Below are positions 9,934-62,198 of a stretch of 64,000 bases of DNA, piece by piece. The notes under the pieces are model-generated. The model saw only the letters and a list, made by a program, of their open reading frames with translations, did no database searches and had not been told where the DNA came from. Positions within the stretch are counted from its first letter, which is position 1, and each line of letters begins with the position of its first letter. The position numbers were made by a program, and so were the translations under genes. This DNA is from Magallana gigas (taxonomy: Eukaryota), in NCBI RefSeq assembly GCF_963853765.1, contig NC_088858.1, forward strand, positions 7,006,001 through 7,070,000, given 5' to 3'.

Positions 9934-11322
9934 ATGAAGTCGTTTCTGTTTCTACTGAGCGTCGCGTGCTCCTGTTATGGACTTCACATCCTGCCGTGTG
10001 AGCCTGGAGACCCGGGGCCCCTGGGATGTGATGCCTACCAGAGAAACGGTGGCCGCCTAGACGTAGGTGGTGCCGGAGGTGGAGCCATGAATTCCATCGG
10101 GTTCGATCAGAATCAGAACGCCGGTTTTGGAAACGGACTTGGTTCCAATTTCCTGGAGCCAAGGCTCGAATTTGGAATGGACGGAGGAGTAGTGAACGAC
10201 TTTAACAATGGATTTGGTCAAGATGTCGGACTGGTCGATACTGGATTCGACAACGGCTTCCAAAATGACTTATCAGGGCTCAGTCTTGACTCCAATATCG
10301 GACCTGGGGGATTTGATCCCAGTCTCGGGGCTGGAGGATTTGACGCCGGTGTCGGCGGTGGATTTGACGCTAGCTTTGATGTGAACTCCGGTTTAGATGG
10401 GCCTTTCATTGGAGGGGGAGGTGGTGGTGGTTTTGATGGGTTCGACAACGGACTTGGAGGGAATATTGGCGGGCCATCCATCGGAGGAAACTTTGGCGGC
10501 GGGAAAGGTGGAATAATCGGGGGACCCTCGGTGGGGGGATTCAATGAAGGGTTTGGATTTGATGGAAACCTCGGTGGGGCAGACTTTGGACAGGACATAG
10601 GCTTTGGTGGTGCTGGTATTGGTAAAGGCAAAGGATTCGGAGGTGCCATCGGCAGTGGTGCAGGATTTGGAAAAGGAAATGGTATCGGTGGTGCCATCGG
10701 TGGTGGTGCAGGATTTGGAAAAGGAAAAGGTTTCGATGGTGGTATCGGCGGTAATGCAGGATTCGGAAAAGGCAAAGGTTTCGGTGGTGGCATTGCTGGT
10801 GGTGCAAAATTTGAAAAAGGGAAAGGCTTCGGTGGAGGTATCGGTGGTGGGAAGTTCGGTGGATCCCTAGGACCATCTTACCCTAAAAGAAAAGGCTTTA
10901 ATATCGACAGAAGATATAATAAAGGCTTCGGAGGTGGTTCTGGATGGGGGTCAAGAGGAAAGGGAATTATAGGGGGATCTCACGGAATCATGGGAGGAAA
11001 AGGCATTGGTGGAGGTAAAGGTATTATTGGAGGTATTGGAATCGGGGGCGGTTTCGGATTTAGAGGCGGACTCGGCAAAGGATTCGGTAAAAACAGAAGA
11101 ATGAACTACGGACCACAGTTGGGACATTCTTTGAAACCACGCATTGGAAAACGGCCAATTTTCCGTCATAGACGTCCAAACATATTCCCGATAAAAAGAC
11201 CTTACCCCAGCTTTGGAATTCGAAGTCCAGTCTCAATGCTACCAAAATCATACGGAAGAGTTTCTAATTATCCAAAGAATATGCCAATTAAGCCGATCCG
11301 ACGAATGGCGTCCGGTTACTAA
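9934..11322 (+). CDS. Secreted Gly-rich low-complexity protein, 462 aa (acidic G/D/F block, 16-aa GKGKGF repeats, basic R/K/P/Y tail); shell-matrix/shematrin-like architecture
   Basis: Long GC-richer ORF. The real start is probably MKSFLFLLSVACSCYG (signal-peptide-like) right after the splice acceptor, not the ORF-track start at 9745. Ends in RRMASGY*. Candidate 3'UTR intron 11333-11482; AATAAA at 11624. Confidence 0.9.
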   Translation: MKSFLFLLSVACSCYGLHILPCEPGDPGPLGCDAYQRNGGRLDVGGAGGGAMNSIGFDQNQNAGFGNGLGSNFLEPRLEFGMDGGVVNDFNNGFGQDVGLVDTGFDNGFQNDLSGLSLDSNIGPGGFDPSLGAGGFDAGVGGGFDASFDVNSGLDGPFIGGGGGGGFDGFDNGLGGNIGGPSIGGNFGGGKGGIIGGPSVGGFNEGFGFDGNLGGADFGQDIGFGGAGIGKGKGFGGAIGSGAGFGKGNGIGGAIGGGAGFGKGKGFDGGIGGNAGFGKGKGFGGGIAGGAKFEKGKGFGGGIGGGKFGGSLGPSYPKRKGFNIDRRYNKGFGGGSGWGSRGKGIIGGSHGIMGGKGIGGGKGIIGGIGIGGGFGFRGGLGKGFGKNRRMNYGPQLGHSLKPRIGKRPIFRHRRPNIFPIKRPYPSFGIRSPVSMLPKSYGRVSNYPKNMPIKPIRRMASGY

Positions 11323-14011
11323 TCCAAGTCAGGTAAGACGCGACTCTCCGCAATTAACATGTGTAAAGATAATCTTGATACCTGTATATAGTCTCCAATT
11401 CTATATCAAGCTTTGTCATTATAGAACTATTTTTCTAATGTACATACATGTACTAAAACTAATTTTGAAACCTATTTTACAGAAATCAACCGAAGCTGTT
11501 CCAATAAGCAAATTCCCAAGTTGTGTGACTTTGCCGGGAGAAATCTGCACGAGAGTATACCAATAGCTGGAGGAGGCTTCTACAATAGTTCTTTGTTTTG
11601 TACCTTTTTGTTTTTATTTATTCAATAAACTTATTCAAATACCTTTTGTCTTCTCTATGATGTATATACAGGGGAAATATCCGGAAGTTTTAACACAAAG
11701 TGCGGCAATAATTACGCAAATCAAACGTATTCACTGCGTCAGGACTAGTAGGAAGTTATTAGGACATATGGATAGATGCTAATTGTACATGAAGCTAGAG
11801 ACCTATAGTGACATTCCACAGGGCGCCTCCTGAGTGTACAGCGCCGAGAGCGCCACTCGAGTAATCTTCTGAGACTTCCTTATTTAAATTATTTCTTCCG
11901 ACAAAAGAAGGTTCAGAACATGGATAAATTTGTAAAACAAGCAACAGACTTCCCTTAACAAAGTTCACAAACAATAAGTTTGACCCCAGTAATGTATCTG
12001 AATACCTTAAGTTGTAAGTTAATCACCATGCATGTCGCTTCTAAAGATAAAAACATGCCATGTAAAATATTTATTATGAGAGGTCAAGCAAAGGTGGCCA
12101 CCATATTATTGGAAATAAAATGCACACACGACAGGTATTACTGAAATCATGGCCAAGGTGTAAGGCGCTAAATCAATGACCTTAAAGCAGCGCAAAAACG
12201 ATGCGCATGTCATGTTCTGACAAGTGCACGAGTTAGGCATCAAATCCGCTTAGTTACACAAGATACAGGGGACCGGTAAACACGAGGGGATCGATAAACA
12301 CGCCGTGACCGTTGTTTACGATGACCACCGCATACTGGTACTGAGGAAGAACTAGTTGTCACTGATTGACATATTTACGTCCATATCTACACCAAGAATG
12401 TCAATCACTCATAGACTGTCAACTTCTCAATGGCCGCTAATGGCTACATTCCTCTACCATCCTTAGTAATCAAAAATTAAAATTTAATTTACTTGTCATT
12501 TTGCATTTTTTTAAAGATTGCAACGAGATTATGAAACAGACACACACAGAAATGTACAATCTGTGTACTATAGGATACGACGTTGTGCAAGTAAAATTTG
12601 TCTCTTATGTTTTTCTGAAGAGATGTCCAGTTTTTGCTAATGGATAACAACATGTTCGTCAGTTTTTATACGCAAACAGCCCGCCCTTGTTTTTATTTTC
12701 AAGTGTTATTGGATGAACCCCAGTAAACAATTAAGTGTCGGGAGGGAATCTCCCCTCTCGCACGCGACGATTGGCGTTGCCCCTTACTATCTTGGACCAC
12801 CAAAATCGCGCGTGCAGTTTTGCAACATGTATTTTATGTTTGGACCACGGTCCCAAATCGCTTTGCGCAGATATATCGCGCACCTAAAAGGAGAGGTTTA
12901 TGAACATCAAATTCTCAAATAGGCCTATTACGTCACAATCACTAAAAACACTTAAACTCATTGGAAAATCACAGAGGCTCGGTTGCTAAAAATAATGATT
13001 AAAATTGGTAATCGTGTATTTCTGTTTATTGCAATAAAAATATTCACTGAAACCCCCTGTTATACAATGTTTAAAAGTGTATTCAATTCATATTTCAAAA
13101 AGTAAAATGACGACACCCGCCATCTTGGATATATTAGGGGTCCTCGGTTCACGCTATGTTTTATAAAAGTTCTCCAATTTATTTAACGATTTCTGACGAT
13201 TTCTAGGTTGGAAAATAATAAAATTACTTATCCCTATCGTCTGATCACATTTGTGTGCCGCAGAGTGAACGCATATTGTCGATATGTATTAGGTATTCGC
13301 CAAACTCATCGAGAGCAACGGATATAAATGCAAACTCTCCATGTAATCACTAAAGAGATTCGAACAATTAACCAAGAGGAATCTTTTCGCGAATTGTTTT
13401 GCTCTCTGTAGCAGAATACAAATATTTTTTAAAATGGTCCCTACTAAAAAATCTAGTTTGATTTTTATGTTACTTTTTGGTTATGATACATCTTTTAATT
13501 ATAGTAACCCTTAAAAGCTTATTCATATAAAATTTTCATGAAAATCACTATTAAGGAAGTTAATTGGGCCTGGCGTCTTTATGTACATGTTTTTATTCCT
13601 TTTGAATATACTTTCAATAAATAAGAGTAAGTATGCAGTTTTGAGGGGTTTTTTTCGCTGAATGAAAGCATTCAGGGTTGTCCAATGATTACTATTTTAA
13701 TGTATTTTAACCCGTATTTTCCCGTCAAGCCATAGTTCTGCAGATACTTTTAAATTAACCTCACGTTGTAATTTTGTCCGGTAATTCATTCTCTCTAAAC
13801 AGGACACATTATCTGTGTTTTGCTGGTACCAAACGTTTGTTAGACCACCTTACATAATGTTAATCACCTTTTGCTCAGTAACGATCAAAAATTGTTCTTT
13901 CAGTCTCGAAATCTCAATGCATACCCTCGATTTATCATTATATGGAAAAGTTAATGTAGGCTAATTTTATAAATTTAGTAACTTGCATCGTTAATAGTGT
14001 TGTAGGTAATT

Positions 14012-14219
14012 ACTGTATACAGGGAAATATTCGCCCCGTTTTATTTTTGCCCCTCTCGCCCTCGTTGTCAGCGGGCGAATTTAAGACTGGGCGAATTCTA
14101 ATGTTCCAAGCAATTTCTTTAGTACACAAGCGAGCTTGGGCGAATTAAGACGGGACGAAACCGTTTGCAAGTGTAGAAGGGCGAAAATAACACGGGGCGA
14201 AAATAACCAAGTATACAGT
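14012..14219. mobile_element. ~208-bp MITE
   Basis: Terminal inverted repeats ACTGTATAC..ATTCGCCCCG / CGGGGCGAAAAT..GTATACAGT with repeated internal GGGCGAA motifs. Confidence 0.65.
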
Positions 14220-61615: not shown

Positions 61616-61761
61616 GGTTTCTACAGGAATACAGAACGCATATCTCATGGTAAAACGAAATACAAAACGTAGGGTATATAGAACATTTTTCAATTCAAGT
61701 AAGTGTTTGTTACAAAATGTAAAGATTACATTCGCTCATATTTGTTACAAGATTCACGCTC

Positions 61762-62198
61762 CTGACCGGATACGGAAAATCTTCCGCAATGAGTGTACCA
61801 ATGATTTCAGGTAAGCATATTGTTCTTTAAGTAATGCAATATTTTAAAATCTTTCAAATAAGAAAATATTGAATTATATATATTTTATTTTTCAAGGATA
61901 CCAGACAGCAGGCTATCCGTCAGGAGGATATGCTGGAGCCTCCTCCTATTCCCAGGCAGGATATACCGGATCATATCCCCAAGCAGGATACAGCGGAGCA
62001 TCTGCCTATTCCCAGGCAGGATATACCGGATCATATCCCCAAGCAGGATACAGCGGAGCATCTGCCTATTCCCAGGGAGGATATGCCGGATCATACTCCT
62101 ATCCCCAGGGTGGATACAGCGGAGCATCTGCCTATTCCCAGGGAGGATATGCCGGAGCTACCCCTTACTTTTCTTCTTCACTTGGGGGTCAATACTAA
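61762..62198 (+). pseudogene. 5'-truncated inverted copy of the block-protein family (end of the coding exon, intron 61811-61897, intact Ser/Tyr/Gly repeat terminal exon)
   Basis: LTGYGKSSAMSVPMISG|GTAAGC matches MTGYGKSSAIAVPMVSG|GTAAGC. Acceptor TTTCAAG then GYQTAGYPSGGYAGASSY...SLGGQY*. No signal peptide or upstream coding exon found. Confidence 0.65.

What the first reader, a model, noticed from the sequence alone, without database searches (positions are those of the whole stretch)
9934..62198. Shared end code: predicted mature N-terminal Gln (pyroglutamate) and C-terminal Tyr across unalignable proteins
Seen: the residue after the likely signal cleavage is Gln in nine of ten low-complexity genes (TSG|Q, TLC|Q, VAG|Q, TTA|Q, VYS|Q twice, ALG|Q, CSA|Q twice); 9934 is the exception (CYG|L). 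The last residue is Tyr in eight genes plus the inverted fragment (SGY, GYY, SGY, RPRY, RKHY, RKHHY, GAMY, SYY, GGQY). Known: N-terminal Gln cyclises to pyroglutamate and resists aminopeptidases. From recall, shematrins end in basic+Tyr motifs, scallop abductin ends in GY, and the pearl-oyster ligament peptide LICP has an N-terminal pyroglutamate. Inference: the termini are a conserved processing or cross-linking handle retained while the interiors diverged, and would make a search key for hidden family members genome-wide.
Basis: partly seen in the sequence, partly recalled or inferred. Interest (0 to 1): 0.72.

Follow-up and report, generated by a model that had tools for sequence, protein, structure and literature searches.

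The report
Oyster matrix genes: Gln start, Tyr end
A 72-kb tandem cluster of at least 14 Pacific-oyster genes for secreted, repetitive matrix-type proteins almost always keeps glutamine as the first and tyrosine as the last residue of the mature chain while the rest of each protein diverges; the pattern is real and looks selected, but each half is already known from single pearl-oyster shell proteins.

Summary
The window is Crassostrea (Magallana) gigas.

- **Gln start.** A cleavage-site weight matrix built from 1877 curated eukaryotic signal peptides places the cut directly before Gln in 9 of 10 genes. G1 is a stable exception. Background Gln at +1 is 11%, giving P about 2e-8, or 8 of 9 (about 2e-7) with one gene per sequence family.
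- **Tyr end.** Tyr is last in 9 of 10 genes, not 8, because G5 also ends in Tyr. Composition predicts 0.46 (P about 1e-13). RNA confirms that G8 ends in Gly and G9 in Tyr.
- **The "inverted fragment"** is a 99% copy of a neighbouring gene's tail exon, so it is not independent.
- **Extent.** Four more cluster genes lie just past the window, all with Gln at +1.
- **Conservation.** In within-family pairs the last residue is identical in 24 of 24, against 8-46% at positions -2 to -10. Gln and Tyr codons and the stop codons all vary. In G4 and G7 the terminal Tyr is the only Tyr.

Selection on the end residues is likely, but the chemistry (pyroGlu, DOPA or di-Tyr) is untested. A basic+Tyr C-terminal signature (shematrins, KRMPs) and an N-terminal Gln (Prismalin-14, PPP-10, LICP) are already published. 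This is a new variant of a known kind.

The parts
9934..11322 (+). G1: Gly-rich (34% Gly) secreted protein, 462 aa. The exception for Gln (best sites S|C, C|Y, G|L). Ends ..RRMASGY*.
   Evidence: ORF. The exact protein is in NCBI/UniRef; a variant is XP_019918888.2 'glycine-rich cell wall structural protein-like [Crassostrea gigas]'. Cleavage scores. N- and C-termini are identical in 15 variants.
16395..16760 (+). G2: last coding exon of a non-repetitive secreted protein. Acceptor cag|GCG at 16392-16394; cleavage ..VTSG|QILRC; ends ..RLGYY*. The start exon was not found.
   Evidence: Sequence. The site is top-scoring both with and without the +1 column. Orthologues at 87-92% identity keep TSG|Q and end ..RLGY*.
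21723..23438 (+). G3: 571-aa protein with about 32 DKYP(V/M) repeats. Cleavage ..STLC|QRQC; ends ..RRRSSGY*.
   Evidence: Passes the Pfam Extensin_1 cut-off through its repeats.
25677..26261 (+). G4: 194-aa Gly/Ser/Phe/Asn-rich protein. Cleavage ..LVAG|QNPD; ends ..RRRPRY*. The terminal Tyr is its only Tyr.
   Evidence: Singleton in the genome.
38977..39259 (-). G5 main coding exon: cleavage ..MTTA|QTTG; phase-1 donor A|GTAAAT at 38977/38976.
   Evidence: The Gln site is best with the +1 and +2 columns and second when blind to them. The orthologue P0008 keeps TTA|Q.
38891..38898 (-). G5 predicted terminal micro-exon (AA TAC TAG), giving ..GPGPKY*. If the intron is retained, the ORF ends ..NVAEY* at the same stop.
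   Evidence: Sequence only; no RNA evidence. In a more distant oyster the same place reads ..YL* or ..YH*.
45518..45796 (-). G6: 92-aa Pro/Asn-rich protein. Cleavage ..SVYS|QTIT; ends ..NRKHY*. A GTAAGT donor follows 17 nt after the stop.
   Evidence: Paralogues G7, G12 and G13.
47834..48109 (+). G7: 91-aa paralogue of G6. Cleavage ..SVYS|QTIS; ends ..RKHHY*. The mature chain has exactly one Gln (first residue) and one Tyr (last residue).
53728..53997 (+). G8: 89-aa Gly/Phe/Pro/Leu-rich protein. Cleavage ..SALG|QFPT (or SSA|LGQ); ends ..LLAIG*. The exception for Tyr, confirmed by RNA.
   Evidence: RNA contigs show a 5'UTR exon near 53117-53137 joined to 53721, then an unspliced run to poly(A) at 54199, at very high depth. 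Orthologue P0007 keeps both ends.
55382..55883 (-). G9 coding exon 1: cleavage ..SCSA|QWRR, then an Asp/Phe-rich block, a Gly/Met-rich block and GYGKK repeats.
   Evidence: RNA joints at 55888/56127 (5'UTR intron) and 55156/55381 (CDS intron).
54985..55157 (-). G9 coding exon 2: Tyr/Ser/Gly/Gln-rich tail ending ..SSGAMY*, followed by a 3'UTR intron (about 54819-54973).
61141..61615 (-). G10 coding exon 1 (paralogue of G9): cleavage ..SCSA|QWRR.
   Evidence: C. angulata orthologue P0001.
60985..61043 (-). G10 coding exon 2: ends ..GASSYY*.
   Evidence: P0001 ends ..GASYY and P0003 ends ..ASSYY.
61763..63579 (+). Inverted 99.2% copy of the intron end, tail exon (ORF 61869-62198, ..GGQY*) and 3' flank of G11. 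Not an independent gene end.
   Evidence: blastn against the stretch just past the window. Absent from the syntenic C. angulata locus.
28369..29281 (-). Thaumatin-like gene inside the cluster, used as an internal contrast: cleavage ..VCSG|HRIH; last ORF ends ..VVFCG*.
34166..34302 (.). Assembly gap, intergenic, flanked by inverted 21-bp minisatellite arrays. Not part of any gene of the finding.

Best explanation
The window holds most of a roughly 72-kb tandem cluster of at least 14 genes in Crassostrea (Magallana) gigas, restricted to oysters. The genes encode secreted low-complexity proteins that are most likely disordered. They are of the kind that build extracellular matrices such as shell framework, periostracum or ligament.

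The genes probably descend from one ancestral gene by tandem duplication. Most share one plan:
- a non-coding first exon;
- a splice acceptor 0-9 nt before the ATG;
- nearly the whole coding sequence on one exon;
- a last intron placed just after, or just before, the stop codon.

Repeat turnover has made the interiors and even the signal peptides unalignable. Purifying selection has kept two single residues: Gln as the first residue after signal-peptide cleavage, and Tyr as the last residue, often after a basic stretch.

The most likely mechanism is inferred, not shown. The N-terminal Gln is cyclised to pyroglutamate, either spontaneously or by the encoded glutaminyl cyclase. This blocks aminopeptidases and removes the N-terminal charge. 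The C-terminal Tyr caps the other end. It shields the basic tail from carboxypeptidases specific for basic residues, and/or offers a terminal phenol for tyrosinase or peroxidase cross-linking (quinone tanning).

Shown here: the pattern, its statistics, its position-specific conservation, the expression and 3' ends of G8 and G9, and the presence of a glutaminyl cyclase gene. Inferred: the tissue, the modifications and the cross-linking.
For: - Species and cluster. Four further members lie just past the window.
- All recognisable paralogues lie inside the cluster.
- No Pfam domain except a repeat-driven Extensin_1 match in G3.
- Cleavage before Gln: using the matrix. Background 11%.
- Statistics.
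- Terminal Tyr is invariant in 24 of 24 within-family pairs, against 8-46% at neighbouring positions.
- The G13 terminal micro-exon reads GHSKSY, GNSKLY and GPMKMY in three oysters whose coding DNA is only 72-75% identical.
- Codon and stop variation.
- Single Tyr or single Gln placed at the chain ends.
- Shared exon plan: confirmed by RNA for G8 and G9.
- Very high transcript depth of G8, as expected for a matrix protein.
- Glutaminyl cyclase homologue, E = 3e-19 to human QC.
- Precedents: PPP-10, with N-terminal Gln and a blocked N-terminus; LICP, pQ...Y; Prismalin-14, whose mature chain starts with Gln; the RnKmY signature of shematrins and KRMPs, and the quinone-tanning proposal for Gly/Tyr regions.
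Against: - No chemical evidence for pyroGlu, DOPA or di-Tyr.
- Tissue of expression is unknown because run names are coded.
- Only G8 and G9 have RNA support here. G3, G4, G6 and G7 are not in the protein collection as exact sequences. The G5, G12, G13 and G14 3' ends are predictions.
- Exceptions exist: G1 has no Gln, G8 has no Tyr, and a distant G5 orthologue would not end in Tyr.
- Most between-species comparisons involve close relatives (87-92% identity), where conservation is cheap.
- If all genes share one ancestor, the family-wise P values overstate independence.
- The exon plan is shared by the unrelated thaumatin-like gene, so it is weak evidence for common descent.
- G9-G11 lack a basic tail, so the 'shield the basic tail' role cannot be general.
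Confidence: 0.6

Rival explanations
1. Historical residue only. The genes are tandem duplicates, and the ends are the parts that repeat slippage does not touch. Gln and Tyr are simply what the ancestor had and carry no function of their own.
For: Tandem arrangement and shared exon plan. Weak residual similarity links some 'unalignable' members: G5 with G13, G1 with G4, and the two-Cys motif of G1 and G3. Exceptions are tolerated (G1, G8).
Against: The residues next to the ends have diverged almost fully (-2 to -10: 8-46% identity; signal peptides unalignable), yet the end residues have not. Synonymous codons and stop codons differ. The G13 micro-exon changes three of its six residues across species but keeps the Tyr.
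Confidence: 0.15
2. Both ends are reactive cross-linking sites rather than caps. The N-terminal Gln acts as a transglutaminase acyl donor towards Lys, and the C-terminal Tyr as a tyrosinase or peroxidase substrate. The proteins would then be end-functionalised building blocks of an end-linked network.
For: G7 has exactly one Gln and one Tyr, at its two ends. G4 has one Tyr, at its end. Several members are Lys-rich (G3 14% Lys). Gly/Tyr regions of pearl-oyster proteins are proposed to be quinone-tanned.
Against: N-terminal Gln cyclises readily, and a glutaminyl cyclase is encoded. In the documented mollusc cases the N-terminus is blocked or is pyroGlu. No transglutaminase link was examined. Tyr-rich members (G3, G9-G11) do not need a terminal Tyr for cross-linking.
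Confidence: 0.15
3. The C-terminal (basic) Tyr is a sorting or processing tag read inside the secretory pathway, for example for granule packaging or convertase/carboxypeptidase processing, and has no role in the finished matrix.
For: 8 of 11 Tyr-ended genes have Lys or Arg within the last 8 residues. G3 and G4 carry multibasic runs that resemble convertase sites.
Against: No such luminal C-terminal Tyr signal was found in the papers read. G9-G11 lack basic residues near the end. LICP, isolated from the mature ligament, retains its C-terminal Tyr.
Confidence: 0.07
4. Artefact: the cleavage sites and gene ends were chosen to fit the pattern, or the ORFs are not real genes.
For: SignalP was not run. 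For G5, G8 and G13 the Gln site is only second best when the matrix is blind to the mature side. Several genes lack RNA evidence here.
Against: The Gln site is top in 10 of 13 genes even when blind, and in 13 of 13 with the full matrix. Stop codons are facts of the sequence. RNA confirms G8 and G9, and RefSeq/UniProt or Logan proteins support G1, G2, G10 and G12. Among SP-like ORFs elsewhere in the 144 kb, none has Gln at +1.
Confidence: 0.03

Closest known systems
Shematrins (Pinctada prismatic-layer framework proteins)
   Same: Secreted, repetitive low-complexity (Gly/Tyr-rich) matrix proteins in a multi-gene family. The interiors gain, lose and shuffle motifs while a short basic+Tyr C-terminal signature (RKKKY, RRKKY, RRRKY, PRKKY) is kept. 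That signature has already been used as a search key (PMC3896809; PMC4897951).
   Different: No sequence similarity was found, and shematrins are reported only from pearl oysters (PMC5400390). Here the basic run is shorter or absent (SGY, GYY, AMY, SYY). Many members are not Gly-rich (G2, G3, G5-G8). An N-terminal Gln was not mentioned for shematrins in the papers read.
KRMPs (lysine-rich matrix proteins, Pinctada)
   Same: [quoted passage not shown] Proposed quinone tanning.
   Different: None of the mature N-termini here is the Lys/Trp-rich, six-Cys basic domain that defines KRMPs. No homology detected.
Prismalin-14 (Pinctada fucata)
   Same: In the curated signal-peptide set its mature chain starts with Gln, followed by an Asp/Gly/Phe-rich block. 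G9-G11 and G14 also start with Gln plus an aromatic residue and then an Asp/Gly/Phe block. The protein is described as GY-rich and D-rich.
   Different: The alignment score of its first 30 residues against G9-G11 and G14 is no better than for shuffled versions, so the likeness is compositional. Its C-terminus was not available to me.
PPP-10 (Pinctada periostracum protein) and LICP (ligament intracrystalline peptide)
   Same: PPP-10 is a 91-residue matrix protein with Gln after the signal peptide and an N-terminus blocked to Edman sequencing. LICP is pQPDHEGTYDY: pyroGlu first and Tyr last. Together they show the same end chemistry in real bivalve matrices.
   Different: These are single proteins from another family of oysters. 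No genomic cluster, no family-wide rule and no link between the two ends has been described. No homology to the genes here was found.

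Membership tests
Shematrin | C-terminal RnKmY signature (RKKKY, RRKKY, RRRKY, PRKKY) | tested here: inconclusive
   G4 ..RRRPRY, G6 ..RKHY, G7 ..RKHHY, G5 ..PKY and G13 ..SKSY resemble it. G1 and G3 have RR(R)xxSGY. G2 ends ..GYY. G9-G11 end in Tyr with no basic residue. G8 has no Tyr (signature).
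Shematrin | Gly-rich GnY / XGnX repeat domains | tested here: inconclusive
   G1 is 34% Gly and G9-G11 are 28% Gly with GY motifs. G2, G3, G5, G6 and G7 are not Gly/Tyr-repeat proteins.
Shematrin | Detectable sequence relationship to Pinctada shematrins | tested here: not met
   Database searches with G9, G6, G2 and a G5-G8/G12/G13 profile returned only oyster orthologues of the same genes. Atlas look-ups returned only a generic Gly-rich cluster. Caveat: no shematrin sequence was compared directly, and G1 was not used as a database query.
Shematrin | Mantle-edge expression and presence in the prismatic layer | not testable with these tools
   Runs holding G8 and G9 transcripts have coded names, so tissue is unknown.
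KRMP | Lys/Trp-rich basic domain with six Cys directly after the signal peptide | tested here: not met
   The first ten mature residues of all 14 genes are listed, and none is Lys/Trp-rich. The feature is described.
Prismalin-14-like | Order-specific similarity to the Prismalin-14 N-terminal Gln + Asp-rich block | tested here: not met
   Local alignment scores for G9, G10, G11 and G14 fall within the shuffle distribution (151-478 of 500 shuffles reach the observed score).
pyroGlu-capped secreted proteins (glutaminyl cyclase substrates) | Gln as first residue after signal-peptide cleavage | tested here: met
   Predicted for 9 of 10 window genes and 13 of 14 cluster genes with a weight matrix from curated data. 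This is a prediction, not N-terminal sequencing.
pyroGlu-capped secreted proteins (glutaminyl cyclase substrates) | Glutaminyl cyclase encoded by the organism | tested here: met
   An exon at G000:C6 near 17.99 Mb (L026:1351-1743) matches human and insect glutaminyl cyclases, E = 3e-19. Co-expression was not tested.
pyroGlu-capped secreted proteins (glutaminyl cyclase substrates) | pyroGlu chemically present on the mature protein | not testable with these tools
   Needs mass spectrometry or Edman blocking tests.

The most novel reading that the evidence does not exclude
The cluster encodes natural end-functionalised ('telechelic') disordered polymers. A two-residue end code (Gln first, Tyr last) would be read by dedicated enzymes (glutaminyl cyclase or transglutaminase; tyrosinase or peroxidase). 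Each chain would then be capped or tethered only at its termini, and the interchangeable interior would set the material properties. G7 (one Gln, one Tyr, at the two ends) and G4 (one Tyr, at the end) would be the minimal examples. The same rule would extend to pearl-oyster proteins (LICP, PPP-10, shematrins, KRMPs) as a general bivalve matrix grammar.
Probability: 0.15. Interest if true: 0.75.

Novelty: new variant of a known kind. Interest (0 to 1): 0.5.

Why it matters
Mollusc matrix proteins evolve so fast that homology searches fail. Here every family is a singleton or is confined to this one cluster, and none has a meaningful Pfam domain. A rule that survives this turnover gives a handle for finding and classifying such genes: signal peptide, Gln first, Tyr last, plus a shared exon plan.

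The rule also points to the residues that assembly may depend on. It yields a cheap, decisive experiment: search existing oyster shell, periostracum or ligament MS data for pyroGlu N-terminal and Tyr or DOPA C-terminal peptides of these 14 proteins. If the ends turn out to be the only cross-linking sites in some members, that would interest protein-material design.

The advance over the published shematrin/KRMP signature and the single pyroGlu cases is incremental unless the chemistry is shown.

Tried and rejected
- **Prismalin-14 homology of G9-G11 and G14.** The first 30 mature residues look alike, but shuffled versions score as well. Rejected as homology and kept as a compositional likeness.
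- **Homologues of G6.** The word-index protein search found none. A profile of G5-G8/G12/G13 against 1.8 billion representatives found only five clusters, all oyster orthologues. This leaves no deep comparison set.
- **ESM Atlas look-ups.** G1 and G9 gave only a generic 'keratin-like' Gly-rich cluster below the useful score. G6 gave nothing.
- **Pfam.** Nothing except Extensin_1 for G3, driven by its repeats.
- **Own-genome searches for hidden paralogues.** G1, G2, G4, G5, G8 and G14 are singletons. The G9 family has three copies and the G6 family four, all inside the cluster.
- **RNA run X21** (poly(A) metatranscriptome): only five reads, all off the genes at 53351-53467, and none on G8 or G9. 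This says nothing about silence.
- **G12 3' end.** Aligning the stretch after its donor in three species showed no conserved terminal exon before G13, so it stays unresolved. The G14 end is also unresolved.
- **Papers not held.** McDougall 2013 (shematrin/KRMP evolution) and Suzuki 2004 (Prismalin-14).
- **Glutaminyl cyclase literature.** No paper in the library links glutaminyl cyclase with mantle or shell.
- **Composition or mutation bias as the cause of the Tyr end.** Rejected. The expected number is 0.46 of 10, and G4 and G7 have no other Tyr.
- **A conserved nucleotide element at the ends.** Rejected, because codons and stop codons vary.
- **Local background for Gln at +1.** It came only from 10 SP-like ORFs outside the cluster genes in the roughly 170 kb scanned (0 with Gln). 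That is too few to mean much.

Full report
**What the window is.** The window is G000:C6:7006001-7070000 of a 564-Mb chromosome-level assembly. It is about 96% identical to a syntenic stretch of Crassostrea angulata chromosome CM046778.1. Its G1 protein is held letter for letter in NCBI/UniRef; a variant in the same 90% cluster is XP_019918888.2 of Crassostrea gigas, and G12 clusters at 90% with UniProt A0A8W8IC20_MAGGI. The organism is therefore the Pacific oyster, Crassostrea (Magallana) gigas, or a very near relative.

**The gap.** The N run at 34166-34302 lies between two inverted arrays of the same 21-bp minisatellite. It is more than 4.5 kb from the nearest gene of the finding. Whether the flanks are continuous is unknown, and it does not matter for this finding.

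**Gene models.** I label the ten genes G1 to G10.
- G1 (9934-11322), G3 (21723-23438), G4 (25677-26261), G6 (45796-45518, minus strand), G7 (47834-48109) and G8 (53728-53997) each have their whole coding sequence in one ORF.
- G2 (16395-16760) begins at a splice acceptor inside its signal peptide, and its start exon was not found.
- G5 has a phase-1 donor at 38977/38976 and a possible 8-nt terminal micro-exon at 38898-38891.
- G9 and G10 each have one coding intron.

RNA contigs from three runs carry poly(A) tails, spliced GT..AG joints and a SMART adaptor. They show the following:
- G8 has a 5'UTR intron ending 7 nt before its ATG. Its transcript then runs unspliced to poly(A) at 54199, so G8 really ends ..AIG.
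- G9 has a 5'UTR intron ending 5 nt before its ATG, the predicted coding intron (55158-55381) and a 3'UTR intron starting 11 nt after the stop, so G9 ends ..GAMY.
- G8 reaches very high depth.

G10's splice matches the C. angulata RefSeq protein and a Logan-derived protein, both ending ..SYY.

**The cluster is larger than the window.** A scan of 40 kb on either side found four more genes just past the window end, all on the minus strand:
- G11 (L006:5176-4316) is a third G9/G10 paralogue ending ..GGQY.
- G12 (L006:8994-8697) is a G6/G7 paralogue.
- G13 (L006:8414-8129 plus micro-exon 8080-8061) is another G6/G7 paralogue.
- G14 (L007:7804-7466) is an Asp/Trp/Tyr/Arg-rich protein starting QFWGDD.

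None was found in the 40 kb upstream or beyond about 82 kb. That stretch is a 99.2% inverted copy of G11's tail exon and flank and is missing from C. angulata. It is a recent duplication or an assembly artefact and not an independent gene end.

**Gln at +1.** SignalP is not available, so I built a log-odds matrix from the published position frequencies of 1877 curated eukaryotic signal peptides (PMC2638155 Additional file 2).
- With columns -10..+2, the best site is directly before Gln in all of G2 to G14.
- With only columns -10..-1, so that the Gln cannot influence the choice, it is still best in 10 of 13. It is a close second in G5, G8 and G13.
- G1's three near-equal sites never precede Gln, and its N-terminus is invariant in 15 public variants.
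- Gln occupies P1' in 11.0% of the curated eukaryotic set.
- The resulting probabilities are 9 of 10, P = 2e-8; 13 of 14 in the whole cluster, P = 4e-12; and one gene per strictly alignable family, 8 of 9, P = 1.7e-7.
- No other position from -8 to +8 shows a preferred residue in more than 5 of 9 families.

**Tyr at the end.** Nine of the ten window genes end in Tyr. G5 ends in Tyr whether or not its last intron is removed. The proteins' own Tyr content predicts 0.46 such ends (P about 7e-14). With one gene per family it is 5 of 6, P between 1e-8 and 6e-7. G4 and G7 contain a single Tyr, the last residue. G7 and G8 contain a single Gln, the first mature residue. Outside the window, G11 ends in Tyr and so does G13 by its predicted micro-exon. 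The ends of G12 and G14 are unresolved.

**Is it more than shared ancestry?** With composition correction, BLASTP joins only {G6, G7, G12, G13} and {G9, G10, G11}. All other pairs are unalignable, although weak hints link G5 to G13 and G1 to G4. Four observations point to position-specific constraint:
- Anchored at the C-terminus, 24 of 24 within-family or between-species pairs share the last residue. Positions -2 to -10 agree in only 8-46% of pairs.
- The G13 micro-exon reads GHSKSY, GNSKLY and GPMKMY in three oysters whose coding DNA is 72-75% identical and whose intergenic DNA barely aligns.
- G2 orthologues end ..LGY where C. gigas has ..LGYY.
- The Gln codon is CAG or CAA, the Tyr codon TAC or TAT, and the stop TAA, TAG or TGA. 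The constraint therefore acts on the protein and not on a nucleotide motif.

Four points count against a strict rule:
- G1 and G8 are stable exceptions.
- The G5 orthologue of a more distant oyster would end ..YL or ..YH.
- Most orthologues available are close relatives.
- If the cluster has a single ancestor, the families are not fully independent.

**Shared gene plan.** In 12 of 13 cluster genes with a known ATG, an AG acceptor lies 0-9 nt upstream of the ATG; G8 and G9 are confirmed by RNA. A strong donor follows the stop within about 10-20 nt in G1, G6, G7, G9 (confirmed by RNA) and G11. In G5, G12 and G13 a phase-1 intron lies just before the last few codons. This fits descent from one three-exon ancestor. 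However, the unrelated thaumatin-like gene in the cluster has the same 5' arrangement, so this evidence is modest.

**What the proteins are.** No Pfam family matches, except that G3 passes Extensin_1 through its DKYP repeats. Every family is either a singleton in the genome or confined to this cluster. Database relatives are only oyster orthologues. The compositions point to extracellular matrix proteins of the shell, periostracum or ligament type (inference):
- Gly-rich with GFGKGKGF repeats;
- Asp/Phe blocks followed by Gly/Met and Gly/Tyr/Ser tails;
- Pro/Phe-rich 70-residue chains.

The signal peptides and the very high transcript depth point the same way. The tissue could not be read from the coded run records.

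**Mechanism.** The first-reader idea of end handles is plausible. N-terminal Gln cyclises to pyroGlu, and the genome encodes a glutaminyl cyclase homologue. In bivalves a blocked Gln N-terminus is documented for the periostracum protein PPP-10. PyroGlu is documented for the ligament peptide LICP, which also ends in Tyr. Prismalin-14's curated mature chain starts with Gln. For the C-terminal Tyr, two roles fit the data. One is a cap that keeps the basic tail, present in 8 of 11 Tyr-ended genes, safe from carboxypeptidases specific for basic residues. The other is a terminal phenol for tyrosinase or peroxidase tanning, as proposed for the Gly/Tyr regions of KRMPs and prismalin-14. None of this chemistry is shown here.

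**Comparison with what is known.** The C-terminal RnKmY signature of shematrins and KRMPs is published and has been used as a search key in Mytilus. Rapid motif turnover in these families is also published. The following appear not to have been described, within the limits of the library searched:
- the pairing of both ends as a rule;
- its extension to a Crassostrea cluster of mutually unalignable proteins, many of them not Gly-rich;
- the position-specific conservation;
- the minimal cases with one Gln and one Tyr.

The genes are not members of the shematrin, KRMP or Prismalin-14 families by any test I could run.

**Verdict.** This is a new variant of a known kind, of moderate interest.

Noticed in passing
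window 61763-63579 and L006:2933-4749: A 1.8-kb inverted duplicate, 99.2% identical, of G11's intron end, tail exon and 3' flank sits head-to-head with G10. It is absent from the syntenic C. angulata locus. It is either a recent inverted duplication or an assembly artefact.
   Followed up: partly
window 32947-33315 and 34690-34974, around the gap 34166-34302: Two arrays of the same 21-bp minisatellite lie in inverted orientation on either side of the assembly gap. This palindromic arrangement probably caused the gap.
   Followed up: no
L006:8697 (G12 donor), L006:8129 (G13 donor), L006:8080-8061 (micro-exon): G12 and G13 both end their main exon with a phase-1 donor after a G, and only one conserved terminal micro-exon (..K.Y stop) lies downstream. 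G12 may splice to the same terminal exon as G13, which would mean two alternative signal-peptide-bearing exons sharing one Tyr-ending exon.
   Followed up: partly
window 16372-16394: Upstream of the G2 acceptor, related oysters read an open frame (M.SYVWQAAV..) where C. gigas has an in-frame TGA in place of TGG. One relative lacks the ATG. The true start exon of G2 is unknown, and the gene might be damaged in this assembly.
   Followed up: partly
window 28369-29281 (minus strand): A thaumatin-like gene sits inside the cluster. It has the same 'acceptor just before ATG' layout and an MKS.. signal peptide, but His at +1 and Gly at the end.
   Followed up: partly
window 21723-23438: G3 passes the Pfam Extensin_1 gathering score (120 bits against 105) through about 32 DKYP(V/M) repeats. 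This is a repeat-level likeness to plant Pro-rich cell-wall proteins, which are themselves Tyr-cross-linked.
   Followed up: no
window 53721-54199: The G8 mRNA reaches a word depth of about 5e5 in one RNA library, far above its neighbours, so it is likely among the most abundant transcripts there. G8 is not annotated in the C. angulata assembly.
   Followed up: partly
window 54819-54973; also after the stops of G1, G6, G7 and G11: 3'UTR introns begin within about 10-20 nt of the stop codon. This is confirmed by RNA for G9 and predicted from strong donors for the others. The arrangement is unusual and recurs across the cluster.
   Followed up: partly
L026:1351-1743 (G000:C6 near 17.99 Mb): An exon of an animal-type glutaminyl cyclase homologue (E = 3e-19 to human QC) lies on the same chromosome, 11 Mb from the cluster.
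   Followed up: partly
window 30650-31376: A 172-bp tandem repeat, 4.3 copies, lies in the intergenic space between the thaumatin-like gene and the gap.
   Followed up: no
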